A program made the translations under genes and the position numbers. Positions 5,880-55,972 of a DNA stretch of 63,322 nt are shown here, piece after piece. Every line of letters begins with the position of its first letter. Positions within the stretch are counted from its first letter, which is position 1. Source of the stretch: Octopus bimaculoides (Eukaryota); NCBI RefSeq assembly GCF_001194135.2, contig NC_068982.1:2322889-2386210 (forward strand), written 5' to 3'. The notes under the pieces were generated by a model. That model was not told the origin of the DNA and did not search any database. It saw only the letters and a program-made list of their open reading frames with translations.

Positions 5880-6604
5880 NNNNNNNNNNNNNNNNNNNNN
5901 NNNNNNNNNNNNNNNNNNNNNNNNNNNNNNNNNNNNNNNNNNNNNNNNNNNNNNNNNNNNNNNNNNNNNNNNNNNNNNNNNNNNNNNNNNNNNNNNNNNN
6001 NNNNNNNNNNNNNNNNNNNNNNNNNNNNNNNNNNNNNNNNNNNNNNNNNNNNNNNNNNNNNNNNNNNNNNNNNNNNNNNNNNNNNNNNNNNNNNNNNNNN
6101 NNNNNNNNNNNNNNNNNNNNNNNNNNNNNNNNNNNNNNNNNNNNNNNNNNNNNNNNNNNNNNNNNNNNNNNNNNNNNNNNNNNNNNNNNNNNNNNNNNNN
6201 NNNNNNNNNNNNNNNNNNNNNNNNNNNNNNNNNNNNNNNNNNNNNNNNNNNNNNNNNNNNNNNNNNNNNNNNNNNNNNNNNNNNNNNNNNNNNNNNNNNN
6301 NNNNNNNNNNNNNNNNNNNNNNNNNNNNNNNNNNNNNNNNNNNNNNNNNNNNNNNNNNNNNNNNNNNNNNNNNNNNNNNNNNNNNNNNNNNNNNNNNNNN
6401 NNNNNNNNNNNNNNNNNNNNNNNNNNNNNNNNNNNNNNNNNNNNNNNNNNNNNNNNNNNNNNNNNNNNNNNNNNNNNNNNNNNNNNNNNNNNNNNNNNNN
6501 NNNNNNNNNNNNNNNNNNNNNNNNNNNNNNNNNNNNNNNNNNNNNNNNNNNNNNNNNNNNNNNNNNNNNNNNNNNNNNNNNNNNNNNNNNNNNNNNNNNN
6601 NNNN

Positions 6605-6874: not shown

Positions 6875-6990
6875 AGCAACATGAAATAAAGTGTCTTGTT
6901 CAAGAACACAACACAGCCTAGTCCAGGAATCGAACTCATTACCTTATGATTGTGAGTCCAACGCTCTAACCACTGAAACATGCGCCTTCA
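6875..6990 (-). mobile_element. tRNA-derived SINE head, family B
   Basis: Reverse complement GGCGCATGTTTCAGTGGTTAGAGCGTTGGACTC...GAGTTCGATTCCTGG has A-box- and B-box-like motifs, followed by TTCTTGAACAAGACACTTTATTTC. Confidence 0.75.
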
Positions 6991-7207
6991 GCAAATGTTA
7001 AATGATGATGATAAGGATGATGATGATGATTCAGGTGTCTTCTGTGTGGTGGGTCAGGTTGATCAGCTTTCAATGGCTTGCACTACTTGCTCTTTTGACG
7101 TCTTTAGTAGGGATCCACTCCATTATTGTCTAATGTTTCTGCAAAAGGTCATGCTTGCTGACCTTTCACCTTTGAGCTAACAATAACCTAAGGAAAAATA
7201 TACAAGC

Positions 7208-7362
7208 AGTGGTTGTGTGGTAAGAAGTGTGTTTCCCAACCACATGGTTCCAGGTTCAGTCCCACTGCCTGGCATCTTGGGCAAGTGTCTTCTACTATAG
7301 CCACAGACTGACCAAAGCTTTGTGAATGGATGTGGCATAAGGAAACTGAAAAAAGCCTGAAC
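7208..7362 (+). mobile_element. SINE family A, 5' half
   Basis: GTGGTTGTGTGGTAAGAAGTGTGTTTCCCAACCACATGGTTCCAGGTTCAGTCCCACTG matches the other copies. Confidence 0.85.
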
Positions 7363-7743
7363 CGGTAAATAATAAGACACTAAAAGAGAATGACTCTCCT
7401 GAGACACAACAATATATATATATATANNNNNNNNNNNNNNNNNNNNNNNNNNNNNNNNNNNNNNNNNNNNNNNNNNNNNNNNNNNNNNNNNNNNNNNNNN
7501 NNNNNNNNNNNNNNNNNNNNNNNNNNNNNNNNNNNNNNNNNNNNNNNNNNNNNNNNNNNNNNNNNNNNNNNNNNNNNNNNNNNNNNNNNNNNNNNNNNNN
7601 NNNNNNNNNNNNNNNNNNNNNNNNNNNNNNNNNNNNNNNNNNNNNNNNNNNTTAATAAATTATAGGGTGGCAAAGAAAATTTTAGAAATTTTATTTACCA
7701 CCAGTGGCCTAGCGAGAGTAAAAACAGTCAATAGACTATGTAT

Positions 7744-8205
7744 TATTCATTAGAAATGCAGAGACGCCTATAATAGGACATCTACTCGCTAGAAATAGCA
7801 GCAAAAATACTACATACCACAAAAGTTAGGGATAATTTCGAAAGGAAATGAAAAATTTTTGTAGGAAATGAAATGAAAAATTTTTGTATTTGCTGCCGAT
7901 TAGGTAAACCGTAAATACGCGGTATATTTTGAAAAATTAGACATAAAAACACGAACCATGCTGCGTACTGATTCGTGCTTCATATGTTGTCTGGTCAATT
8001 CTGCTGACGAAAGTCTGACCTTGTAAGATATAATCTTTATCTTACTAAAATTGACTTGAAACCATGGTACAGAATATAGATTGGTAAAAGTTTTTATTTT
8101 TCATTTCCTTTCGAAATTATCTCTAACTTTTGTGGTATGTAGTATTTTTGCTGCTATTTCTAGCGAGTAGATGTCCTATTATAGGCGTCTCGGCATTTCT
8201 AATGA

Positions 8206-8208
<3 letters not shown>
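7744..8208. repeat. 113-bp inverted repeat (7744-7856 / 8096-8208) enclosing a hammerhead ribozyme
   Basis: Arms are reverse complements with 2 mismatches by eye. Confidence 0.95.
7998..8075 (+). ncRNA. Type I hammerhead ribozyme, canonical core
   Basis: Stem I ATTCTG(7998-8003)/CAGAAT(8070-8075); core CTGACGA(8004-8010); stem II AAGTC(8011-8015)/GACTT(8053-8057); GAAAC(8058-8062); palindromic stem III ACCATGGT; predicted cleavage after GUA at 8069. Confidence 0.85.
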
Positions 8209-8239
<31 letters not shown>

Positions 8240-9085
8240 GCTTCTGCGTATATGTATATATATAGATACACTGACATATAGTTATATACGCATATATGCA
8301 AGCATGACTGAATTCATATATCTGTATTTACATAAGCAGCAATCAATTGCTACGTTTAACACGGAATGCGAAATGCTTTCCGTGATGGAGAAATTATTTC
8401 GGTGCCTGGAATGAAGGTTATTCGCTTCAAAATACAGGGATTTGACGAGACATCGTAATACATACGAAATGTTAAACCAGGCCTAATCAAAGGCAAGTTA
8501 TTATATTGTTCCGGATAAAACTGGGTTTACAGCTCTCAAGTGTACTACGGTGAATTAGATACGGTGATCATTAATCAAGATCATAACATTATCGATGTTT
8601 CCAGAACAGAATAACATGATTAAGAACTTATTATGTCGTCATAATATGGTAAGATAAATGAGCATCGTCACCGAATAAATAATTATTTTCAATATTTCTC
8701 TCAAAACATATTTTTTTATTATTATTTCTCGAAACTGAGGTGCATATGATTAATAGCTACGTTATAAGGTATCAGAGAATCATAGATACACGAACAAACG
8801 CACGCACACGCACACACACACACACACACACCCATACACACATACTCACACACATACACACACGCACACCACACACGCTCACACGCACACACATATGTAC
8901 ACTCACATAGTATATACATATACGTGTGTACATATATGTGTGTAGATATGTACGCACACCTGCGTATACAAATATGTGTATGTGCGCGCGTGTGTNNNNN
9001 NNNNNNNNNNNNNNNNNNNNNNNNNNNNNNNNNNNNNNNNNNNNNNNNNNNNNNNNNNNNNNNNNNNNNNNNNNNNNNNNNNNNN

Positions 9086-10809: not shown

Positions 10810-11650
10810 CTTATGTTCACGGAGGTGGCTCAGGAAGACTGACCTGAAAAAGCATAATGAGAGCATAATGATCGTAGCCCAGGATGAAGCATTGAATACC
10901 AACTTAGTGAAAAGGGATATATACCACACACGTGCAACGAACCTCTGCCGAATGTGTGGGAAGATGGTCGAAAGCGTGACTCACATTGTTATTGCTCGTG
11001 AAATTTTTTGCGCAGAAAAAGTACAATCGCAGTCAGGATAAGGTAGCCGAAAACCTTCACTGGTTACTATGCCGGAAGTATGGATACGAGGTAACGGGTG
11101 CTTGGTACCTACATACACCGGAAAAGGTAAAGGACGAAAAGGGGAAGGAAAATATCCTGTGGGACTTTGACTTCCAGACAGATAAGGTGTTAGAGCACCG
11201 AAGGCCGGATATAGTAACCTTTAGGAGGGACAAACGAGAGTGCCTAATGATCGACATGACAGTGCCAGGAGATCAACATATCATGAAAGAAAGAGAAAAG
11301 AGTGATAAATATGGGGACCTGTAAATCGAGATAACCAAGATGTGACAGTTGCGAGAGTCAAACATAAATGTTGTCTCTATTGTCATCGCAGCATTGGGTT
11401 CAATACCACCCAACCTAAAAAATAAAAAAAAAACATCTGGAAACTTTAGAAATACTCTGCAATCTATTTGCATTGTAAAAGTCGGCATTACTTGGAACTG
11501 CATGCATATTGCGTAAAGTACTGTCTGTCTGAGGTCCTTATTGCAACTTGACAAACAGTACAAATCCCCCGGTAGACACAATATCTTCAATCAACAACCT
11601 CACGATATTGCACGATACTGTGCGATGTCTTAAATAATAGTAATAATAAT
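10810..11650 (+). mobile_element. 3' segment of an RLE-type LINE (CCHC knuckle + PD..D endonuclease + tail)
   Basis: WLRKTDLKK...AQDEALNTN...CRMCGKMVESVTHIV; HWLLCRKYG...WYLHTPEKV...ILWDFDFQTDKVLEHRRPDIV...IDMTVPGD...KYGDL*; ends in an AAT-rich tail at 11632-11650. Confidence 0.9.
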
Positions 11651-17990: not shown

Positions 17991-18520
17991 TTAAATTAAT
18001 AATAATATGTATTATATAATATGTATATAATTATATTATGGGACCAAAGGCGAAAATGACCTGTCTCCAGCATGCTTGAAGTGCCGTGACCTACAAAAAG
18101 ACTACCAAAACCTCCAGATAAATATGCACATGGCTGAAAGCGGGCCAACGAAAGAATATTAAAAAGACCTCCCGTTAATTGTGAATTGGTTCCAATTTCT
18201 GGATTGAAACCATAAACAAGCGTTTTTCCTTCGTCAACACGATACTCGGGGAAATATAAATACAAATAATTGCACATACCGTGCAAAGCAGGTTCACACG
18301 TCTACATAAACTGGTTCACACGTTTAGATTGGAACCAATACACAATTAACGCGGGGTCTTTTTAATAGTCTTTCGCTGGCCCGCTTTCAGCCATGCGTAT
18401 ATTTATCTGGAGTTTTTGGTAGCTTTATGACGGTATCTACACTTCAGACATACCGGAGATAGGTCGTTTTCGCCTTTGCTCTCTTAAGATAATTTTATAC
18501 ATTTTATACATTAATTTAAT
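17991..18520. mobile_element. Fold-back/MITE-like element with ~200-bp imperfect TIRs
   Basis: 17991-18196 is the reverse complement of 18328-18520 (e.g. CAAAGGCGAAAATGACC / GGTCGTTTTCGCCTTTG; GCTGAAAGCGGGCCA / TGGCCCGCTTTCAGC). Confidence 0.8.
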
Positions 18521-24345: not shown

Positions 24346-24976
24346 GTGTGTGTGTGTGCGTGTGTGTGTGTGTGTGCAATAAATAAACAACGACAGATAA
24401 AAAACATATATGTATATTGAGGGTACAACCGGATGGGAGACAGATAGAGAGGGTCCCTAATTCTTCATCAGTTATCAACCAAATTGGTAATACTCAGTTT
24501 CGCACCATGGAGGGTAAGACTGGGAACTTCACATATTGGTGGTGCCTGCGAAAGTTGCAAAGAATGTCGGGCCTCAAGTAAACAAAACAGCACAGATTGG
24601 ACATATGAAAGTAGAAAAAATGTAATGTAAGACAATGCACAAAAGACGAACTAAACAGGAAACGAGCAAAATACGACCTTAGGGTCAAAAAGATAAGAAT
24701 GGCGGGTAACACTTAGAAGAAATACTAAAGACTATGGCGACCAAGTGGCTGGGCGGCCGGTGTGAAAAAGGGAGAGAAAGAAGGAAAGCTGTCCACGGGT
24801 CACGCGTGAAGAGCAAGTAGAGGAGAAAGAGAGAGCGACAGAGAGAAAATAGAGAGGAAATAAGGGAAGAAATGAAGGCGGTACCGAGGGGTAATATTTA
24901 TCTCCACCACTTAAACATGGATGCTCTGTTAGAAACAAGCTATACTGCGGTAGATACCATGAAAGAATCTCTGATG

Positions 24977-25597
24977 TAGGCTTTTGGTGTAAAATACACA
25001 CTTGTCTACATCACCAGCGGGGAGATAAATACCCACCATCTCCAGCACAAAGACCACCAGATCACGTGATTTCTAGCTTCTTTGATTTCATCAATGTTGG
25101 ACGCTTGGCCGCTACATATAGCAACGACTCACCTCCCCGTTAGTGAGATATAGAAAATCAGTGCCAGAAGAGGCACTAGTGTCCCGATTAAGGAGTGAGC
25201 TTGTTGAAAATTATATACTAGGGTCAGAGGCAGTATTAAACTGAGAGGTAATATTTGTTTTTCCCCTTCATCATGGATGCTCAGCGTCTGTGAGTATTTC
25301 TCTTATGGGCTCTACCGTGATAAAGTTTGTTCTAAGAGACCATCCCTGTTTAAGTGCCGAATATATTTCAACAAACTCAATGGCTAATCACGACAGCAGT
25401 GTCAGTTCAGGCATTAATTTTCCATATATTACTAACGGCGAGATGAGTCACTGCACTCTCTAGCATCAAACGTCCATTATTGATGTGACTAAGGAAAGTC
25501 GAAATCATGTGATCAGGTAATCTTCGCGCTGGAGATAAAAGAAATTTATCTCCCCGCTAGCGATATAAACATGCGGGCATTTTGCGCCAAGAGCCTA
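24977..25597. mobile_element. Old fold-back element with ~168-bp diverged inverted arms
   Basis: 24977-25144 vs reverse complement of 25431-25597 (shared AGCGGGGAGATAAAT, ATCTCCAGC, GATCACRTGATTTC, CATCAAT, GACTCA, CCGTTAGT). Confidence 0.65.
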
Positions 25598-25952
25598 TAA
25601 GAGAGTTTCTCTGTCCATGCTTTGGGAGAGTAAATTTTGTTTTAACCGAACATTCACTTTTTAAGTGCAGATAAATAGTGCCTCTTGAAAGAACAACAAA
25701 AAATAATTGGAAAAGATATGAAAACTTTTTTCACAGTTTTACCCTATAGTCAAAAATTTTCCCTGTTCAAAGCATTAAAAACTAGAAAACAGTTTTTAAA
25801 CCAAAGAACATGGATATAAAAAAAATATAATTGCAGTGCACCATCCGGAATTTCACCATGTCAAGTTTGATTTCATCGATTCAGTTTAGTGTCGTTAATA
25901 TACACATATTTTAAAATGGAGTTTATCAGCAAGATTCGAATTAAGATAAAGA

Positions 25953-29449: not shown

Positions 29450-30148
29450 TAAAAACTGTATAGATATATGAGATATATATAAGAATTATATATAACAAGG
29501 GCGCGATGAGTATTAATGTTTTTTATAATGCACTATGAAAATCTAGTTTTAATTTTGTGTTTTCGGTGTACATTTTACTCTTATTTTTAGCAACGCTGGT
29601 GTTTCATAGCGCCCCTGTTATATATATTTCATATATATCTATTAATTTTGCCTATACGGTTTTTAGCTTGTGACCACTAACATTATTATCTCTCGTGAGT
29701 GTTAATGCTCTTTATTTAAAAATTCTATCCAGCTAGTTCGTTTTCTCAATGCGGCTTGGGCACAGAAACGAAAGCAAGCATTGGTTGAAGTGATAGATAG
29801 GTTTGTTACGAGTAGACGAGGCTGAAGAGAACCAAGTGCTTTTGACGCTAAATTCGAAATCATGATACCAGGTTAACTGGAGTTCTTTCTTGCAATTTTA
29901 CAGAGGTAAGACGCAATCCTTGTTCACTTAGTTTTTTTTTCCAACCACGCCTGTTAAGATCTAGTGTTAATTTTGCCGCTTCGGAGTGTTTTTGACTCCT
30001 ATTTTTAGCAAAACTGGAGCTTCATAGCGCCTTTGTTATATATAACTCTTATATATATCTACTAATGTTGCTTATACGGTCTTTAGTTTGTGGCCACTAA
30101 CATTATTATGTCTCATGAGTATTAATATACTTTATATATTTAAAAATG
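29450..30148 (+). mobile_element. Non-coding tandem unit (direct repeats 29540-29725 / 29958-30148, inverted piece 29450-29509) with an internal HHR; PLE/retrozyme-like
   Basis: Direct repeats with ~419-bp period; 29471-29509 is the reverse complement of 30022-30060 (36/39). Confidence 0.7.
29817..29872 (+). ncRNA. Hammerhead motif with intact core and eroded stem I
   Basis: CTGAAGA(29822-28), stem II GAA/TTC, GAAA(29856-59), palindromic stem III ATCATGAT, AUA site (29865-67); stem I only 2 bp contiguous (GG/CC). Confidence 0.6.
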
Positions 30149-32025: not shown

Positions 32026-32215
32026 GCTGAATCAGCCATACATTCATATTGTAAATATATATGCTGACAATCTGGATTTAGCCAAAACATCAAGCGACGA
32101 AGTAGTCTCTACTGATGAGCTTGTAATTTTCAAGCAAATCTAGACTAGTATAGATATCTCATTTGGTGTGGGCGGCCATCTCCTCCAGTCAGTATATAAA
32201 AATGTGCTTTGTTGC
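32026..32215 (+). repeat. Diverged direct repeat copy A with an HHR relic (32108-32148)
   Basis: Aligns with 34032-34220; CTA-CTGATGA-GCTTG(TAATTTT)CAAGC-AAAT-CTAG-AC-TAG. Confidence 0.65.
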
Positions 32216-32456: not shown

Positions 32457-34019
32457 CAGAGACTGCCATAATATAAGCTTCAGTAAGTACAAGTGTATTG
32501 AAATATTTATTATAGAAGATTAAGAACACGTTGAGACTAGATATTTAACACATTTAGATATATCTAATGTCTATCGTTCGTGAAAAGTTCAAGTCAACGG
32601 AATAAATATTTCGTAATTTATGAGGAAATGAACCAATAACCTCCCAAACTGCAACGGCCAAAATTAAAGGGTCACTTAGAAAACAATGAAAATGGAACAA
32701 GAACAAAAACGAAACCCTTACTATTAATATTCTGTGAACATCTCTTTACTATCAACGACCTCCTGATATCCTGTCATCACAGGACTGAATTGATTTCTTG
32801 TAAAATGATGGAGTAATATTGTTCCATTCGTTTTTCAATAATCACCAGAGATGATCTTGGTTCTTTGGATGTCTCCTTCGTGCTCCATCTCCAATAATAT
32901 TCCAAACGTTTTCTATAGGGTTCAGATTGAGACTTTGAGGTGACCAATCTATGAGATCAACCCCTTCATCACTCAAAAAATCTTCGCAATGTGACAGGGA
33001 GCGTTGTCCTGCACGCTCACAGGAAGTTGAACTGACAAGGATCGGAGATGTGAAAGGGCATGCTGTCTAAGAATTTGCTTGTATATTTCAGCCTTGACAG
33101 TCCCTTGTAGGCGAATAAGTGGACCAGGACCAGCAGCAGACATCGTTCCCCATACCATTACACTGCCTCCTCCATATTTCACTGTCTTCTTCACACATGC
33201 ACGAGATAACCTTCCGCCACTTCGTACATCCCGTCAACAGAACCAATCACATTAACCTTCGATTCATCGCTAAATTGAACCTGCGACCACTGTTCTTTTA
33301 TCCAAATGACATGTTAACGAGCGAAACACATACGGGCTCTTTGATTCTTCTTGGAGAACAGAGGATTCTTTGCCGGTACCCGTGCAAGCAATCCAGAACC
33401 TCGTAACCTCCAAAAAACTGTTTTGCGCGATACGTTGACATCAGAATTGGTGCTAAACTCGCGGGATATCTCAGCAGCACTCTTAAGCCTATCTTTCAGT
33501 GACATTCAAACTATAAAACGATCCTGTTTTGGTGAAGTTTTACAAGGTCTACCAGTTTAGAGTTTAGCTTCTGTTGATCTTGATGACTTAAAACGAGCTA
33601 CAATTCGTTGCACGGCACTTCTAGACCTTCCTACAATACTTGCTATCACAGAATTTGACTTGCCCTCTTGTTGTAGACACACAATACTTTGTTTTTCTTC
33701 ATAGGACACCGGTCGTCTCTCACAAGCAGCCATGTTGTCAGTTGAATGTTCCAATAATGTACGATCAGTCTTTTAAAATACAAATGCCTCGCTTAGTAGT
33801 TCATTTTTTTCTAAGTGACACCTTTTGGCCGTTGCAATTTGGAAGATTGTTTGTTTATTTCCTCATAAATTACGAAATATTTATACCATACACTTGACAT
33901 TTTCACGAAAGATAGATATTAGGCATATCTAAATATGTGCAAAATATCTAGTCTCAAAGTGTTGTTAATCTATTTCAATACACTTGTTCTTACGGACCCT
34001 TATATTATGGCCGCTACTC
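32457..34019 (-). mobile_element. Full-length Tc1-family DNA transposon with ~230-bp IR/DR terminal inverted repeats
   Basis: Left TA|CAGAGACTGCCATAATATA... through ~32690 mirrors the right end ~33800-34019; the outer and inner DR motif CGGCCAwAAT..AAGGGTC recurs; ~1.56 kb. Confidence 0.9.
32724..33733 (-). pseudogene. Tc1 transposase pseudogene
   Basis: MAACERRP...GRSRSAVQRIV...GRPCKTSPKQDR...FSDESK...KYGGGSVMVWGTMSAAGPG...QDNAPCH...WSPQSLNLNPIENVW; at least 4 stops and 3 frameshifts. Confidence 0.95.
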
Positions 34020-34031
34020 TCACATCGTTTC

Positions 34032-34220
34032 GCTAAATCAGCCATAAATTTGTAAGGTAACTATATATACTAAAAGTCTGATTTAGCCAAACATTAGAGC
34101 GATTGAGTAGTCACTGCTGGCAGGCCTACGACTAATGGCCGAAACTGGTCTAGTCCAGTGATCTCTACAGTCCTTCGTGGGGTGGTCATCTCCCCCGTCA
34201 GTGTACCTTGATACTGTGTG
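34032..34220 (+). repeat. Diverged direct repeat copy B with an HHR relic (34113-34154)
   Basis: ACTG-CTGGCA-GGCC(TACGACTAAT)GGCC-GAAAC-TG-GTC-TAGT; core damaged. Confidence 0.65.
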
Positions 34221-37248: not shown

Positions 37249-37330
<82 letters not shown>

Positions 37331-37332
<2 letters not shown>

Positions 37333-37860
37333 AGTTGTATACTGCCAACTTAACGTGACAGTCCCAATAAGGGAATACACTACTGCTGTTTAGTCCAAGG
37401 AAGCCAGACCGCTTCCTATTAGGCCTTGACACACTTTCTGTGCCCTTATCCATACAAAGGGGAGACAAACTCCTCCAACCAGCCCAGCCTGCTTTCAGGG
37501 ACAACTACTTTATCGCACCACTACTACTTAAATCTCACTGAGAGATTTAGAAATTCGTTATTTCTAATTTTCGTTACCAGTGAATAGTATTTCACTGAAA
37601 TAGTATATCCATACAAAGTTTAGACGGATTTCTTCAGCTAGCCCGCCATGCTGCTTCAGGCTGATGACGAGCAAAGACTCAGAAACATGTCCCTGAATGC
37701 AGGCTGGGCTGGTTGATGGAGTTTGTCTCCCCTTTGTATGGATAAGGGCACAGAAAGTGTGTCAAGGCTTAATGGGAAGCGGTCTGACTTCCTAGGGCTA
37801 AACAGCAGTAGTGTATTCCCTTATTGGGACTGTCACGTTAAGTTGGCAGTATACAACTAC
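37331..37860. repeat. 173-bp inverted repeat (37331-37503 / 37688-37860) with an HHR at the inner edge
   Basis: 8 mismatches in 173 bp by eye. Confidence 0.95.
37651..37702 (+). ncRNA. Type I hammerhead ribozyme, near-canonical
   Basis: Stem I TTCAGG(37655-60)/CCTGAA(37692-97), extended by CTGC/GCAG around a 1-nt bulge; CTGATGA(37661-67); stem II C-GAG(CAAAGA)CTC-A with a C:A mismatch at the base; GAAAC; palindromic ACATGT; GUC site, cleavage after 37691. Confidence 0.8.
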
Positions 37861-39160
37861 ATTTGTTGTTTACACCACCTGTCCTCGTCTGTTGTTTTTT
37901 TTCGTAAATTCTCCCATATATCATTCTTTAACAAGAAAAGTATTGAGGAGGATTTCGAAATTCGAGCCAGCTAGGCCATCAACCGGCTTTAGATGATCCA
38001 AGTTCATTTTTGCTTTAAATAATTTCTCTTAACTTAAAATTTTCTTGAGTGTCCTGTGTTCTGCTGAATGACGGCTATGGTGTATTTGGGGTTTTGATGT
38101 TAATATTGGTTAAATTTGACCGACACTATATATATAGCCAAGATGAACTTAAAATGATTTACAGTCCGATGGTGGCCTTGCTGATTGAAGTTTTGAAGTC
38201 ATTGTTAACAGTATTATTGATAAAGAATAATAAATTTGTACTCTACCAAATGTATTGAGTAATCTTTCAATTTAATACAAAATTGCTTCTGTTATAACAA
38301 AAGAAACAAACATTTCTATACACGCGCGCGCACAAACACACATGTATGTATATATGCATGTACGTATGTATGTATGTATGTATGTATGTATGTATGTATG
38401 TATGTATGGAAAGGATTAGATGTATTAATTTCTAAAAGACCATCTAAAGATAATGCTATAAATGAAGAGGCGGTGCTTTATAATCAGTTGAGAAACCAAC
38501 TCTTACATATTCCTTCCCCTCCTCCTCCCTCCTTCTCCTCGTTGTGCTCTTCTTTCTCCTCCTACTCTTTCTTCTCCGACTGCTTCGTTTTCTTTTCCTA
38601 CATCTAACAATACAATAATTTCATCTGCTTTGGTATAATACTGTATTTTCAGTCCTTCGTTGCACAGGTTTACTTTCATTTTCATTTTCTCTATATTTAT
38701 ACTTCTTGTTTCCTCTCGATACAAGCAAAACACAACGCGTGGCAGATGCATAGCGAATAAAACGCGCCTTTCATGCAGGTCTGACGAAAGCTCATTCAAT
38801 TTTCATAACCGCAAATATTTAGTAAGTTTTCCCGTAGAACTTTTGCATGATTTCGTGTTAGAGACAGACATAATACTGAAACAGATGTAACTGGTCATAA
38901 AACTTGTGATAAACACATTCTCTGTCTTCTTATTTGGATAATGTTTTACTATTCACTACGCTCTCAGATTGATTTTAGCGATGTGACACATGGATTTTCC
39001 ACACCTGAAATACTTATCTTGCTTAAAGCTAAACCTCACGAGTGTAGATAGCCTAAAGCACCAGTTGCGTGCTGCATTGAAAATAACCCGTTTTTCTACC
39101 CTTCCAGGACATACGAATGCATATACATAGACAAAGGTACATATATGCGTGTGTTTGTAT

Positions 39161-40843: not shown

Positions 40844-41410
40844 TCATTTCATACAACTGCAATCTACGCAACGCAAAGCAAAAAAATTAAGAATGTCGTC
40901 CTTCTCTATACTTGATTTGTATTCATTAAGGGAAGCAAGTATCACGAGGTTTGATTTTCGCTGGTGCTTCATATTTCGTCGAAAGGGTGTCATAATTCGA
41001 GTTAACGTCGAAAACGATGATTCACATGTAGCAGTGCTCGATCCAAATGTCAATGCTGCACCATACAAAAGATAAACATTTGGAAAGGCATCCTGTACAA
41101 TACATAAAGATCCAAAAATATCAAGCAGTGTCATCATATTTTGTTTGGAAATGTTTGCTTTAACCACAGTAAGTTCAGAAAGTGAGGCCGATTTATCGCA
41201 ATTAACTTAATTGTTCAAAGGTTTAAAGCATCAAAATCGAAAAACGTATCGGACGTTGGTAGTAGACTTGCCAAGGAAGAATATATGCTGTCGTTTTGCC
41301 CTGAAAATCTATCGTCTAGCTCTCCGAAGCTTTGGTCGATAAATTTTGCGGTGAAAGGTTATCCAGTCATCTTGAGATGGTACAAGGCCTTCAACAACAT
41401 AATCTGAAAA
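40844..41410 (-). pseudogene. hAT transposase C-terminal remnant (dimerisation domain)
   Basis: AFPNVYLLYGAALTFGSSTATCESSFSTLTRIMTPFRRNM...KSNLVILA matches the hAT dimerisation motif (FPN+..L...ALT.P.SSA.CERSFS.L..I.T..R..M); upstream frameshifted IDQSFGELDDRFS. Confidence 0.8.
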
Positions 41411-53056: not shown

Positions 53057-55184
53057 GCTTGATGCAATTCATATGTAAAGTCTATGGATCAGAAATTAGC
53101 GAAGCAGATTGGTGTTCATGATCATTGAGTAAGAAAGGTAGAACTCTATTTCCGGGTATAAAAAAAGTAAACTTGAATAAGTTTAAATATTTCACGTGTT
53201 CCTACTTTTTATCTCTATCACCTTTATAATTTGTACTCATCTCAGTGTGGATTGTAAATGCATTGTTATATAAAATAAATAGTAAAAAAAAGTTAAGAAT
53301 ACTACTAGTAAGAATATATGTAGGGTCTTTTGTATATTCCTTTACATCACTAACATGTTTTACGTTCAAGAATACGCACTGGCCTATTTTGTAGCCTAAT
53401 TAACATAGCCAGTGGTGGGAAATTTCTATTGTAGAGTTCCTCGTATATGTTAATTCACACGAATCGCTTTTATAAAAGTTGCATTGTTGCTAATGAACAC
53501 ATAGATGTCGCTGATAGCTCGTATAATTATAATTGAGAAAGCATTTAGCAATAGGACGTGATTCTTGCTTGCTAATGAACCGATTTTATGCAGTTGCCAA
53601 AGTTGAAATATAGAGCATCCATTATAGTTCATGAATACGCTGTTTATTAAATGCAGAAGAAAAAAATGTATATTCTTTTCATATCGCAGATAAGCCAACG
53701 AATAGATCATCAAAACTAGCATTCCGCCAAAATTGAGTATAATGCAGCACTTTGAAATGTGTGTGAAGGAATAGAAATTGTAGCTGAACGAATTTATTAA
53801 TAATTTTCCTGGATTGTTTGCGTACAAATGTAACTTTGGTTATGCTCATTCATAGAAATATGAAATGTTTCAAAGACGTCTGCTTCTCTCGTTTCTTTTA
53901 CTTGGATAGAAAGTCTTTGCATTTTGCGTGGGATAATATATATTAGAACAAAAAAGTTTTCTCATTAAAATCAATACTTGAATAAAAATGTTGATTATGA
54001 AAAGGTATAGATTCTTGCATGTGACTGAAAAGTGTTTTGCGAAAATGTTTAGTGTGATACAAATTTTACAATATGTAACCCTTAGCTGAATATATCTTGT
54101 TAAAAGTTAAGAAAAAAACTTCAGATTCAATATTCACTTTTTAACATTAATAAATCAACTTTCCGAAGAAGGCGTATGTGAATTGGAGGAAAATACATAG
54201 TCAAGGAAACAAAATTATAATTACACTTTGCTTACTAGAAACATGTCTTCACACAAAATGTCTTGTCACTTTGTTAACAACCGGCTTGAACTCTCTCAGG
54301 AAGAACTTAAATTAAACTCAAGAAAAAAGCACGCATACACATACACACACGTGCGCGCGAGCGTGTGTTGTGACTTCTGTCTCATGGACGACAGTGTCTA
54401 TCATAAAGCAGTTTGTTGTCATACCCAGGACATACATTCATACATATATGTGCATATAATTGGTAAGGATTTTATAACGATTTAGTAGAAAATTCTAAGA
54501 AACAGCAAGTTATTTTTGAGTTGATGACGCTTGGTGGTGTTTCAACGTTACAAATCTTTTCTTAAACAATCTCTTGTCGGTTCGATCAGTGGTGTTCACC
54601 GGTCTCTTTGTTTTCGTATTTACAAGACATTTGATGTGAAATTCTGTATTGAAACAGCCTGGCTTTGGGAGTGCTGTTACATCAACAAATACACACGCAC
54701 AGATTCTGTTTCCTTAAACCAATTAACTAGTCGATTATTTGGTTTTAATCATTCAGTCAATCAATGAATCAGTTACTGAACGATTAGTCGAACAGTCGAT
54801 TAGTTTGTGGAATAGTTGACTATTTGGTAAAATTGAAGCTGCCCCTCCAAAGATGCAATAAGATTATTGCCTTTATTTATTGACATATATTAACAATAGT
54901 CTAAGTCTACTAAGAGTCACATGACGTTCCCGAAGAATTGTATTCTGTAATTTCCGTTGTTACTTCTTTTTTTATTTCACCTTTCACCCCTTTCTCATTG
55001 ATAGTCACGATCAGTGGCCTCTCAAAGTTCGCTTATTTCTTCGATCAAAACAACAATTCCATTTTGGTGAGTATTATTTGCTTACGTCATTCACTACGTA
55101 AAATGGATATCCTTTCGTCCTTTACTTTAATCCTTGCCACTGCTGTCCATGGGCACCTCTCTCTCTCTCTCTTTATATATATAT

Positions 55185-55391
55185 AAAGTTACAGAAGTGA
55201 TTTTAAATTCTCAAACGTGGGATAATGCTAATAATATAACCTGAACAGGATAAACTATCCCTATTTTGCAGACAAAAGTGTAGGCTGGCCGCCTACACTT
55301 TTTTCTGCAAAATAGGGGTAGCTTATCCTGTTCAGGCTATATTATTAGCATTATCCTGCGATTGAGAATTTAAAATCACTTCTTTAACTTT
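55185..55391. repeat. Near-perfect palindrome: 101-bp arms, 5-nt loop
   Basis: 55185-55285 vs 55291-55391, 8 mismatches. Confidence 0.95.
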
Positions 55392-55972
55392 CTAAGACAT
55401 CTCAACGCTTCTAAAAGCAAACTGTGTTTGTTTGTTTCCGTTCATCGTAATTTGAATTTAATACATAAAGTTATTTGTTGTTTTTCTTCCTTCTTTATTT
55501 GTTTGTATAATTTCGTGTTTATTCACTGCAGTTTCTTTTGTGATATATATACAATCATTCTTCCAAAATATAATGTTTTAATTTAAAGCAAATGACCTTG
55601 GTAATTTCTTTCGTCAGAAATTTGGTTCGATTTCTTGATTGTCCGCATTAAAGCTGATAGGATCGAGTCAGGTGATTATATCTCCGATCATCTGATTATA
55701 TGCTCTCCTCATAATATATCAAATGCTATTTGTTCCTCAGCAGATCAAATGATGACCCCATTCTATATATTTCTATACACTTAGACTTTATCCAAATAGG
55801 AGTGTATTCTTCACATGTAGTTAGCGAGTTGTAGCTCCACGCGAAAACACGAAAAGTAGTTAATAAATGTCACATTGTTCCTCTACCTTATTATTACTTA
55901 AGTACTTCACTATAATCTCCATATTTCATTCTCTGGAGATGTTAAGTTTCTCTTTAGATTCCTGACTTCGGT

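What the first reader, a model, noticed from the sequence alone, without database searches (positions are those of the whole stretch)
7998..8075. Fully canonical type I hammerhead with a structured 37-nt loop II
All conserved core nucleotides and three stems are present. Stem III is the palindrome ACCAUGGU, which allows either a monomer (AC/GU closing a CAUG loop) or a dimer fold. Loop II holds its own 8-bp hairpin (GTAAGATA 8023-8030 / TATCTTAC 8038-8045). Stem I may extend past an internal loop (GTCTG / TAGAT), giving a possible loop I-loop II tertiary contact. This is the best candidate for an active ribozyme in the window.
Basis: partly seen in the sequence, partly recalled or inferred. 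Interest (0 to 1): 0.85.

Follow-up and report, generated by a model that had tools for sequence, protein, structure and literature searches.

The report
Hammerhead ribozyme inside a retroelement insertion
The motif is a real animal-type hammerhead self-cleaving RNA motif, and it is an ordinary part of a small truncated retrotransposon insertion, one of several in this window, rather than a stand-alone novelty.

Summary
It is far beyond chance. A descriptor with a palindromic helix III finds 2 sites in this window and none in 41 Mb of simulated sequence. Rfam Hammerhead_1 aligns to exactly these coordinates, but only below threshold (21 bits against 34).

"Fully canonical" overstates it. The 10.1-11.1 pair is A-U rather than the conserved G-C. 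The two core boxes are 47 nt apart, against 13-14 nt in published animal hammerheads. Helix III is only 2 bp in a monomer.

The motif sits on the + strand in the 239-nt spacer of a 465-bp inverted repeat (arms 7744-7856 and 8096-8208, 98% complementary) that abuts an (AT)n array. Two unrelated elements in the window (37328-37863 and 24887-25685) have the same layout, with hammerheads pointing outward.

This matches published Penelope-like element insertions: a 5'-truncated copy next to an inverted 5'-truncated copy, with a hammerhead upstream of the 3' end. I conclude it is a new member of a known kind. Catalytic activity of this solitary copy is untested, and it would probably need dimerisation. 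No homologous copies could be retrieved.

The parts
7744..7856 (-). Left inverted-repeat arm. Read as an inverted, 5'-truncated copy of the last 113 nt of the element.
   Evidence: 113 nt, 98% complementary to 8096-8208.
7840..7888 (+). 25-nt tandem duplication at the junction between the inverted and the direct copy.
   Evidence: TRF period 25, 2.0 copies, 95%. Family D2.
7857..8095 (+). 239-nt spacer. Read as the 5' part of the longer, direct, 5'-truncated copy. It carries the hammerhead near its 3' side.
   Evidence: No other copy in the window.
7998..8003 (+). Helix I, 5' strand (AUUCUG).
   Evidence: 6/6 pairs with 8070-8075.
8004..8010 (+). Core box CUGACGA (C3-A9, N7 = C).
   Evidence: Matches the Rfam RF00163 consensus CUGAcGA.
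8011..8057 (+). Helix II domain: 5-bp stem AAGUC/GACUU (A10.1-U11.1), a 7x7 internal loop, and an 8-bp hairpin 8023-8030/8038-8045 with a 7-nt loop.
   Evidence: pair probabilities 0.91-1.0 in the isolated 78 nt.
8058..8060 (+). Core G12 A13 A14.
8061..8068 (+). Helix III, ACCAUGGU. It is a perfect palindrome: 2 bp plus a CAUG loop in cis, or 8 bp in trans in a dimer.
   Evidence: Same pattern as the published ACGCGCGU, ACACGUGU, ACAUGU and ACAGUACUGU.
8069..8069 (+). H17 = A. Predicted self-cleavage between 8069 and 8070.
   Evidence: Position in the consensus. Cleavage itself is not tested.
8070..8075 (+). Helix I, 3' strand (CAGAAU).
8096..8208 (+). Right inverted-repeat arm: the 3'-terminal 113 nt of the direct copy. 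The element ends 139 nt after the cleavage site.
8206..8239 (.). (AT)17 microsatellite abutting the right end. Read as the target-site context.
   Evidence: TRF; flanks printed.

Best explanation
7998-8075(+) is a genuine hammerhead motif of the animal type I kind: helix I of 6 bp, and a short palindromic helix III that favours a dimeric 'double hammerhead'.

It belongs to the 3' region of a small retroelement insertion of the Penelope-like (PLE) or PLE-mobilised retrozyme kind. The 465-bp unit 7744-8208 is read as two copies made in one insertion event, head to head. One is a direct 5'-truncated copy (about 7857/7889-8208) that carries the hammerhead 139 nt from its 3' end. The other is an inverted, more severely truncated copy (7744-7856) holding only the last 113 nt. 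The insertion lies next to an (AT)n array.

In the parent element, the hammerhead would cut element transcripts, most efficiently when two copies lie in one RNA or meet in trans. In this solitary copy it is a passenger. It may cleave weakly after A8069, or through dimers with sibling transcripts.

Shown here: the motif, its non-random nature, the inverted-repeat architecture, and the recurrence of that architecture in two other elements. Inferred: the PLE/retrozyme affiliation, the mode of insertion, and any cleavage.
For: Motif:
- All core positions and three helices are present.
- Expected by chance 0.001 per window. With a palindromic helix III there are 0 hits in 41.4 Mb simulated against 2 in the window.
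- Rfam Hammerhead_1 aligns end to end to 7998-8075 at 21.0 bits, E = 0.0051 in a 151-nt search.
- Helix I of 6 bp, GAAAC/GUA, and an 8-nt AC...GU palindrome match the cloned coral, mussel and axolotl retrozyme hammerheads and the description in PMC4209133.
- RNAcofold of two copies gives the double hammerhead at -44.4 kcal/mol. With the palindrome destroyed it is -34.8.

Context:
- The arms are 113 nt and 98% complementary.
- Element 37328-37863 has 176-nt arms (95%), a 184-nt spacer, and an intact hammerhead at 37655-37697(+) abutting the right arm. (TA)63 abuts its left end.
- Element 24887-25685 has arms of about 330 nt (71%), each with a hammerhead relic pointing outward.
- The first two share no sequence, so the layout recurs independently.
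- The arm ends lie 171-173 nt after the cleavage site in three copies of the second family, which suggests a fixed 3' terminus with variable 5' ends.

Literature:
- PLE insertions are 5'-truncated and often have an adjacent inverted 5'-truncated copy that gives inverted repeats. They carry hammerheads in their pLTRs, near the 3' ends. They favour microsatellite/(TA)n targets and upset short-read assemblies (PMC8557442).
- A PLE protein nicks and extends both DNA strands in vitro (PMC11167929).
- An assembly gap lies 92 nt upstream of the element.
Against: - No reverse transcriptase or GIY-YIG reading frame occurs in the window, so the PLE link rests on architecture and literature alone.
- No other copy of this element could be retrieved, either in the window or in the collections. 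There is therefore no covariation or 5'-truncation series for this family.
- The motif is below Rfam's gathering score and was missed at larger search sizes. It was also missed by my model built from published retrozyme hammerheads.
- 10.1-11.1 is A-U, and helix II carries a 37-nt insertion.
- In longer transcripts, competing pairings displace stems I and II (probabilities 0.01-0.38 in the longer contexts).
- Foldback elements without hammerheads also occur in the window (18010-18513, 55182-55394), so an inverted repeat alone is not diagnostic.
- Only one flank of each element abuts (TA)n.
Confidence: 0.72

Rival explanations
1. The 465-bp unit is a miniature inverted-repeat DNA transposon (MITE or foldback) whose internal region happens to contain, or has captured, a hammerhead. 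The arms are terminal inverted repeats recognised by a transposase, and the hammerhead has no link to how the element moves.
For: - The arms are terminal and nearly perfect.
- The flanks are TA-rich, compatible with a TA or TAT target duplication.
- The window also holds other foldbacks without hammerheads and fragments of DNA transposons, including a hAT dimerisation domain at 40847-41206.
Against: - Three sequence-unrelated inverted-repeat units in 61 kb all carry hammerheads oriented toward an outer end.
- In one of them the hammerhead lies inside both arms, as expected for inverted copies of one unit rather than terminal repeats plus a unique core.
- No clear target-site duplication can be called in the AT-rich flanks.
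- My literature search found no paper linking hammerheads with MITEs.
Confidence: 0.12
2. It is a solitary monomer of a non-LTR retrozyme, a non-autonomous element with tandem type I hammerheads that makes small circular RNAs. It has been rearranged into an inverted configuration. This is close to the best explanation, but without direct descent from an autonomous PLE copy.
For: - Helix I of 6 bp, the palindromic helix III, a low G+C content and a unit size of about 320-350 nt fit the animal retrozymes in PMC7229834.
- Retrozymes are reported to derive from PLE pLTRs (bioRxiv 10.64898/2026.07.22.740005).
Against: There is no tandem repeat and no second hammerhead in the unit, so no circle can be excised from this locus. 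The inverted partial copy is the documented signature of PLE-type insertion.
Confidence: 0.1
3. It is a chance match to a permissive consensus in AT-rich sequence, and perhaps the inverted repeat is an assembly artefact next to a gap.
For: - The motif is below the Rfam gathering score, was missed in larger scans and was missed by model R1.
- The descriptor was written after seeing the candidate.
- A gap lies 92 nt upstream.
- A genome of gigabase size would hold tens of chance hits at 0.001 per 61 kb.
Against: - With the palindromic helix III there were 0 hits in 41.4 Mb simulated against 2 in the window.
- The fold z-score is -3.18.
- The same element layout occurs around independently detected hammerheads.
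- The arms differ at 2 of 113 positions, so they are not a simple duplicated read.
Confidence: 0.05

Closest known systems
Canonical type I hammerheads of animal non-LTR retrozymes and satellite repeats (coral Amil224, mussel Mg353, axolotl Ax353/Ax330; Rfam RF00163 Hammerhead_1)
   Same: Open helix I of exactly 6 bp. CUGANGA, GAAAC and GUH boxes. Helix III is a perfect AC...GU palindrome of 6-10 nt (here ACCAUGGU; mussel ACGCGCGU, axolotl ACACGUGU). H17 = A as in Ax353. Dimer-prone design. Low G+C host repeat.
   Different: 47 nt between the core boxes instead of 13-14. A-U instead of G-C at 10.1-11.1. The recognisable loop 1-loop 2 contact nucleotides were not assessed. Not in a tandem repeat. 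Below the Rfam threshold, and missed by a model built from these four sequences.
Hammerheads in the pseudo-LTRs of Penelope-like elements (Cervera and de la Pena 2014, PMC4209133; Craig et al. 2021, PMC8557442; PMC11167929)
   Same: The hammerhead lies 139 nt upstream of the insertion's 3' end (about 85-92 nt in the anole PLE). The copy is 5'-truncated and has an adjacent inverted 5'-truncated copy that forms inverted repeats. It neighbours a (TA)n array. Helix III is palindromic and helix II is enlarged. The assembly is broken nearby.
   Different: No RT/GIY-YIG reading frame, no partial tandem (pLTR) and no identifiable 30-40-bp tail at this locus. PLE 'minimal' hammerheads usually have a shorter helix I, an extra base before 10.1 and G10.1-C11.1.
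Double-hammerhead (dimeric) self-cleavage of newt satellite 2 and avocado sunblotch viroid RNAs (Forster et al. 1988, as cited in PMC4209133 and PMC7229834)
   Same: A weak helix III in cis and a stable extended helix III in trans between two copies. The predicted dimer has exactly this topology.
   Different: Those RNAs are multimeric transcripts with two copies in one molecule. Here only one copy is present at the locus.

Membership tests
Hammerhead ribozyme, type I (Rfam RF00163; animal canonical type) | Invariant core: C3 U4 G5 A6 N7 G8 A9, G12 A13 A14, A15.1-U16.1, H17 (not G). | tested here: met
   CTGACGA 8004-8010, GAA 8058-8060, A8061/T8068, A8069.
Hammerhead ribozyme, type I (Rfam RF00163; animal canonical type) | Three helices around the core, with helix I open-ended (about 6 bp). 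| tested here: met
   Helix I 6/6, helix II 5 bp, helix III 2 bp in cis or 8 bp in trans.
Hammerhead ribozyme, type I (Rfam RF00163; animal canonical type) | Helix II of about 4 bp starting with G10.1-C11.1 and capped by a short loop 2. | tested here: not met
   A8011-U8057 at 10.1-11.1. The stem is 5 bp, followed by a 37-nt insertion with its own hairpin. The boxes are 47 nt apart, against 13-14 in published examples. PMC4209133 calls G10.1-C11.1 highly conserved.
Hammerhead ribozyme, type I (Rfam RF00163; animal canonical type) | Short helix III with a palindromic sequence (dimer-competent). | tested here: met
   ACCATGGT is a perfect palindrome. The dimer is predicted at -44.4 kcal/mol.
Hammerhead ribozyme, type I (Rfam RF00163; animal canonical type) | Score at or above the curated Rfam gathering threshold. 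| tested here: not met
   21.0 bits against 34, and seen only in a 151-nt search. Not reported. Not reported by model R1 built from four published hammerheads.
Hammerhead ribozyme, type I (Rfam RF00163; animal canonical type) | Loop 1-loop 2 tertiary contact. | tested here: inconclusive
   Internal loops follow helix I (after 6 bp) and helix II (after 5 bp), at roughly the usual distances. No conserved contact nucleotides could be assigned.
Hammerhead ribozyme, type I (Rfam RF00163; animal canonical type) | Site-specific Mg2+-dependent self-cleavage. | not testable with these tools
   Needs transcription and cleavage assays.
Hammerhead ribozyme, type I (Rfam RF00163; animal canonical type) | Conservation with compensatory changes among homologous copies. 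| not testable with these tools
   No homologue of this element was found in the window or the collections.
Penelope-like element (PLE) insertion | Reading frame with a telomerase-like RT and a GIY-YIG endonuclease. | tested here: not met
   No such frame in the window. The Pfam scan of 10 frames found only a hAT domain. This is expected for a copy truncated to about 350 nt, but membership is therefore unproven.
Penelope-like element (PLE) insertion | 5'-truncated copy with an adjacent inverted 5'-truncated copy, giving flanking inverted repeats. | tested here: met
   Arms 7744-7856/8096-8208, with the unique part contiguous with the right arm. Same layout at 37328-37863 and 24887-25685. Description in PMC8557442.
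Penelope-like element (PLE) insertion | Hammerhead motif in the terminal repeat region, near the 3' end. | tested here: met
   The cleavage site lies 139 nt from the right end. The distance is 171-173 nt in the other family.
Penelope-like element (PLE) insertion | Partial tandem (pseudo-LTR) and an optional 30-40-bp tail. | tested here: not met
   There is no direct repeat of the unit, only a 25-nt duplication at the junction. No tail was recognisable.
Penelope-like element (PLE) insertion | Insertion bias for microsatellites / (TA)n. | tested here: inconclusive
   (AT)17 abuts the right end of this element and (TA)63 abuts the left end of 37328-37863. Only one flank is involved in each case. 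My rough estimate of 2 of 6 element ends landing on an array boundary by chance is about 1e-4.
Non-LTR retrozyme | Tandem repeats of about 170-400 bp, each with a type I hammerhead. | tested here: not met
   No tandem repeat of the unit and a single hammerhead.
MITE / foldback DNA transposon | Terminal inverted repeats flanked by a target-site duplication, in many copies with identical ends. | tested here: inconclusive
   Inverted repeats are present. A duplication cannot be called in the TA-rich flanks. Copy number is unknown.

The most novel reading that the evidence does not exclude
The most novel reading not excluded concerns the layout itself. A hammerhead sits in the loop of a long, near-perfect hairpin: 113-176-bp arms, with the ribozyme next to the 3' arm. 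This is seen twice in unrelated elements.

Under this reading the layout is functional rather than a by-product of insertion. Self-cleavage would open the loop of a read-through hairpin transcript and release a double-stranded RNA with free ends, for example as a small-RNA precursor.

Alternatively, the extended helix II (a 7x7 internal loop plus a hairpin) could define a new structural subclass of hammerhead that makes its tertiary contact through internal loops.
Probability: 0.06. Interest if true: 0.6.

Novelty: new member of a known kind. Interest (0 to 1): 0.3.

Why it matters
Hammerheads in Penelope-like elements and retrozymes are already known to be very abundant in invertebrate genomes, so the find is useful mainly as annotation. 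It explains the motif and the inverted repeat, and it probably explains the nearby assembly gap.

Two points go a little further:
- This copy shows that an intact core with a 47-nt helix II domain and an A-U closing pair escapes both the Rfam threshold and a model built from published sequences. Censuses based on those tools therefore undercount such variants.
- The role of hammerhead cleavage in the life cycle of these elements is still open (PMC8557442, PMC11167929). Young head-to-head insertions such as this one (98% arms) could be mined genome-wide, to ask whether 5' ends of copies cluster at the cleavage site.

Tried and rejected
Searches for homologues of the element all failed, so no covariation test was possible for this family:
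- blastn of 7653-8300 and of the unit against the window found only its own arms and microsatellites.
- I looked for other copies through predicted proteins. The 56-aa frame across the left arm and spacer had no candidates. Ten window frames had no exact entries.

Organism identification also failed. A search with the hAT fragment returned only unnamed metagenomic or Logan proteins, and ARAGORN found no tRNA genes. I suspect an invertebrate (cephalopod-like) short-read assembly, but that is a recollection, not a result.

Alignment and model attempts:
- MAFFT alignment of all the hammerheads (A3) was not structure-consistent at the 3' side. I tabulated features by script instead and did not run pair counts on it.
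- Model R1 did not recover the candidate.

Ideas considered and dropped:
- The right arm of 37328-37863 begins 4 nt before the predicted cleavage site. I considered that hammerhead cleavage sets the inner boundary of inverted copies. I dropped it because the match is not exact, and because this element's arm starts 26 nt after the site.
- A second half-hammerhead upstream (GAACCATG at 7954-7961) is not supported by any box or helix.
- The weak descriptor match at 29822-29884 (I = 4, II = 3) is within what relaxed criteria allow by chance.

Full report
**1. The observation**

- Helix I is ATTCTG 7998-8003 paired with CAGAAT 8070-8075.
- The first core box is CTGACGA 8004-8010.
- Helix II is AAGTC 8011-8015 paired with GACTT 8053-8057.
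- Between the helix II strands lie 37 nt containing a perfect 8-bp hairpin (8023-8030/8038-8045).
- GAA occupies 8058-8060.
- Helix III is the palindrome ACCATGGT, 8061-8068.
- H17 is A8069, so cleavage would fall between 8069 and 8070.

The isolated 78 nt folds into stems I and II plus the inner hairpin (centroid structure; z = -3.18; 1 of 200 shuffles folds as well). Pair probabilities are high: 0.57-0.96 for stems I and II, and at least 0.98 for the hairpin.

Stem I can be prolonged beyond a small internal loop in two alternative registers.

**2. Chance**

A mechanical descriptor asked for helix I of at least 6 bp, helix II of at least 5 bp, helix III of at least 2 bp, and up to 60 nt in the helix II domain. 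It finds only this site in the window. It is expected 0.001 times per window in 1000 dinucleotide-preserving shuffles.

A second descriptor was modelled on published animal hammerheads. It requires a perfectly palindromic helix III of 6-12 nt. It finds two sites in the window (8004 and 37661) and none in 41.4 Mb of simulated first-order Markov sequence. The motif is therefore not a chance match.

**3. Database models**

- Rfam at gathering thresholds finds nothing in the window.
- A permissive scan of 7700-8400 lists no hammerhead.
- When only 7960-8110 is searched, with laxer filters, RF00163 Hammerhead_1 aligns end to end to exactly 7998-8075(+). The score is 21.0 bits against a gathering score of 34, with E = 0.0051. 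The model treats the 47 nt between the boxes as a local insertion.
- I built a covariance model (R1) from four hammerheads printed in the supplement of PMC7229834: a coral, a mussel and two axolotl sequences. Run without filters, it does not report the candidate. It does report 37655-37697(+) (20.9 bits, E = 0.0011), 25054-25100(-) and 34111-34161(+).

By curated or model-based scores, the candidate is therefore sub-threshold. The reason is visible: the large helix II domain.

**4. Comparison with published animal hammerheads**

PMC4209133 describes the typical animal type I motif. Helix I is 6 bp, helix II is 4 bp, and helix III has a 1-2-bp stem with a small palindromic loop. G10.1-C11.1 is highly conserved, and the design favours dimers.

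The four cloned examples have perfect AC...GU palindromes of 6-10 nt and 13-14 nt between the boxes. The candidate compares as follows.

| Feature | Published examples | Candidate |
|---|---|---|
| Helix I | 6 bp | 6 bp |
| Boxes | CUGANGA / GAAAC / GUH | present |
| Helix III | perfect AC...GU palindrome, 6-10 nt | ACCAUGGU, 8 nt |
| H17 | A in Ax353 | A |
| 10.1-11.1 | G-C (highly conserved) | A-U |
| Between the boxes | 13-14 nt | 47 nt |

RNAcofold of two copies predicts the classical double hammerhead. Helix III forms 8 bp in trans, and the helix I strands are exchanged. The energy is -44.4 kcal/mol, against -15.5 for each monomer and -34.8 when the palindrome is destroyed. In a monomer, helix III has a pair probability of 0.01.

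In longer transcripts, other pairings compete with stems I and II. 'Fully canonical' is thus too strong. 'Complete core, animal-type architecture, unusual helix II' is accurate.

**5.

The motif lies in the 239-nt spacer between two 113-nt arms, 7744-7856 and 8096-8208, that are 98% complementary. It is on the + strand, and its 3' end is 20 nt before the right arm. An (AT)17 array abuts the right end, and an assembly gap lies 92 nt upstream of the left end.

The top hit of my model turned out to sit in the same kind of structure. Its arms are 37328-37503 and 37688-37863 (176 nt, 95%), with a 184-nt spacer. The hammerhead at 37655-37697 is on the + strand and runs into the right arm. (TA)63 abuts the left end.

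A third, older unit has arms 24887-25216 and 25361-25685 (71% identical). Each arm carries a hammerhead relic, and the relics point outward.

The first two units share no sequence. In the three copies of the second family, the outer end of the arm lies 171-173 nt after the cleavage site. In the candidate's unit the distance is 139 nt. A fixed 3' end with variable inner ends is what retroelement copies show.

Two further relics, 34111-34161 and 32106-32157, are related to each other and differ by paired changes in helices I and II.

**6. Interpretation**

Craig et al. (PMC8557442) describe insertions of Penelope-like elements in these terms:
- They are strongly 5'-truncated.
- They often have an inverted 5'-truncated copy immediately adjacent, producing inverted repeats.
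- They carry hammerheads in the pseudo-LTRs, near the 3' ends.
- They show a bias for microsatellite/(TA)n targets.
- They cause trouble in short-read assemblies.

PMC11167929 shows that a purified PLE protein nicks and extends both DNA strands. That gives a route to head-to-head copies. In that element, reverse transcription starts about 85-92 nt after the hammerhead cut site.

The unit 7744-8208 fits this description. It reads as a direct copy of about 320-350 nt carrying the hammerhead, plus an inverted copy of the last 113 nt.

Animal retrozymes (PMC7229834; bioRxiv 10.64898/2026.07.22.740005) are the non-autonomous relatives. They occur in tandem, which this unit does not.

I therefore read the finding as the hammerhead of a PLE-type, or PLE-mobilised, retroelement insertion. 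This is an inference from architecture and literature. No RT/GIY-YIG frame is present in the window.

**7. How it would work**

In the parent element, the hammerhead would process element transcripts. Its weak helix III makes cleavage depend on a second copy, either in the same RNA or in trans. That is the behaviour reported for newt and axolotl motifs and, weakly, for PLE motifs.

At this locus there is one copy only. Efficient cleavage is therefore not expected unless sibling transcripts pair with it.

The A at 10.1 keeps a purine N7. From general knowledge of the A9/G10.1 metal site, that could preserve metal binding. This is an inference only.

**8. Rivals**

- A MITE or foldback DNA transposon cannot be excluded without more copies. 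The window does contain foldbacks without hammerheads.
- Against that, the hammerhead-outward layout recurs in three unrelated units, and one of them has the motif inside both arms. This favours inverted copies of one retroelement unit.
- A chance match, or an assembly artefact, is unlikely.

**9. What failed**

No homologous copy of this element could be obtained by any route. The organism was not identified. The decisive covariation and truncation-series tests remain to be done on the source genome.

**10. Verdict**

This is a real hammerhead motif of a known kind, in a known kind of mobile element, with an atypical helix II. Interest is modest.

Noticed in passing
window 37328-37863 (hammerhead 37655-37697 +): A second hammerhead with an intact core: TTCAGG CTGATGA C GAG CAAAGA CTC A GAAAC AT GTC|CCTGAA. 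Its helix III is ACATGT. It lies in a 536-bp inverted-repeat unit (176-nt arms, 95%), and (TA)63 abuts the left end. It was the top hit of my model R1 (20.9 bits, E = 0.0011) but was not reported by Rfam at E<=10.
   Followed up: partly
window 37688-37692: The right arm of that unit begins 4 nt before the predicted cleavage site (37691|37692). The inverted copy therefore ends almost, but not exactly, at the ribozyme cut. This could be chance or microhomology.
   Followed up: partly
window 24887-25216 and 25361-25685: An old head-to-head pair (about 71% identical). Each arm holds a hammerhead relic (25054-25100 on the - strand, 25474-25520 on the + strand). Both have T at position C3 (TTGATGA / TTGATGT) and 10-nt helix III strings (ATCACGTGAT, a perfect palindrome, and ATCATGTGAT, with one mismatch).
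   Followed up: partly
window 34111-34161 (+) and 32106-32157 (+): Two related hammerhead relics with damaged cores (CTGGCA; a missing G12). They differ by paired changes in helix I (CACTG/CAGTG against CTCTA/TAGA-) and in helix II (GGCC/GGCC against GCTTG/CAAGC). Their upstream flanks are about 78% identical.
   Followed up: partly
window 37719-37731, 25552-25575, 34178-34194 and equivalents: A short GGAG...(A)TCTCC(CC) hairpin-like block, by eye about 25-60 nt downstream of the hammerhead, is shared by the 37655, 25054/25474 and 34111 units. The outer ends of the arms lie 171-173 nt after the cleavage site in three copies. The last about 20 nt of the 7744-8208 unit (GCATTTCTAATGAATA) weakly resemble the corresponding region of the 34111 unit.
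   Followed up: no
window 18010-18513 and 55182-55394: Two other long inverted repeats: about 190-nt arms with a 131-nt spacer, and 104-nt arms with a 5-nt spacer. Both have TA-rich flanks and no hammerhead boxes. They are probably MITE-like foldbacks.
   Followed up: partly
window 40847-41206 (-), 32976-33233 (-), 10980-11321 (+): Fragments of transposable-element proteins. One is a hAT C-terminal dimerisation domain (Pfam PF05699, E = 2.5e-08). One frame looks Tc1/mariner-like by eye (GGGSVMVWG...QDNAPCH) but has no Pfam hit. One frame resembles the C-terminal part of retroelement ORFs, again without a Pfam hit.
   Followed up: partly
window 29822-29884 (+): A weak hammerhead-like match (helix I 4 bp, helix II 3 bp, helix III 2 bp). 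It is within what the relaxed descriptor allows by chance (0.03 expected per window).
   Followed up: no
window 5880-6604, 7428-7651, 8997-9085 and others: Runs of N (2545 in all) and about 70 microsatellite arrays. The window is a gapped short-read assembly of a repeat-rich eukaryote. tRNA-like SINE sequence occurs at about 7205-7300, and in reverse at about 6876-6980. No tRNA gene is called.
   Followed up: no
window 7934-7985: A strong hairpin is predicted just upstream of the hammerhead, best on the minus strand. It includes GAACCATG, which can pair with part of the helix III palindrome.
   Followed up: no
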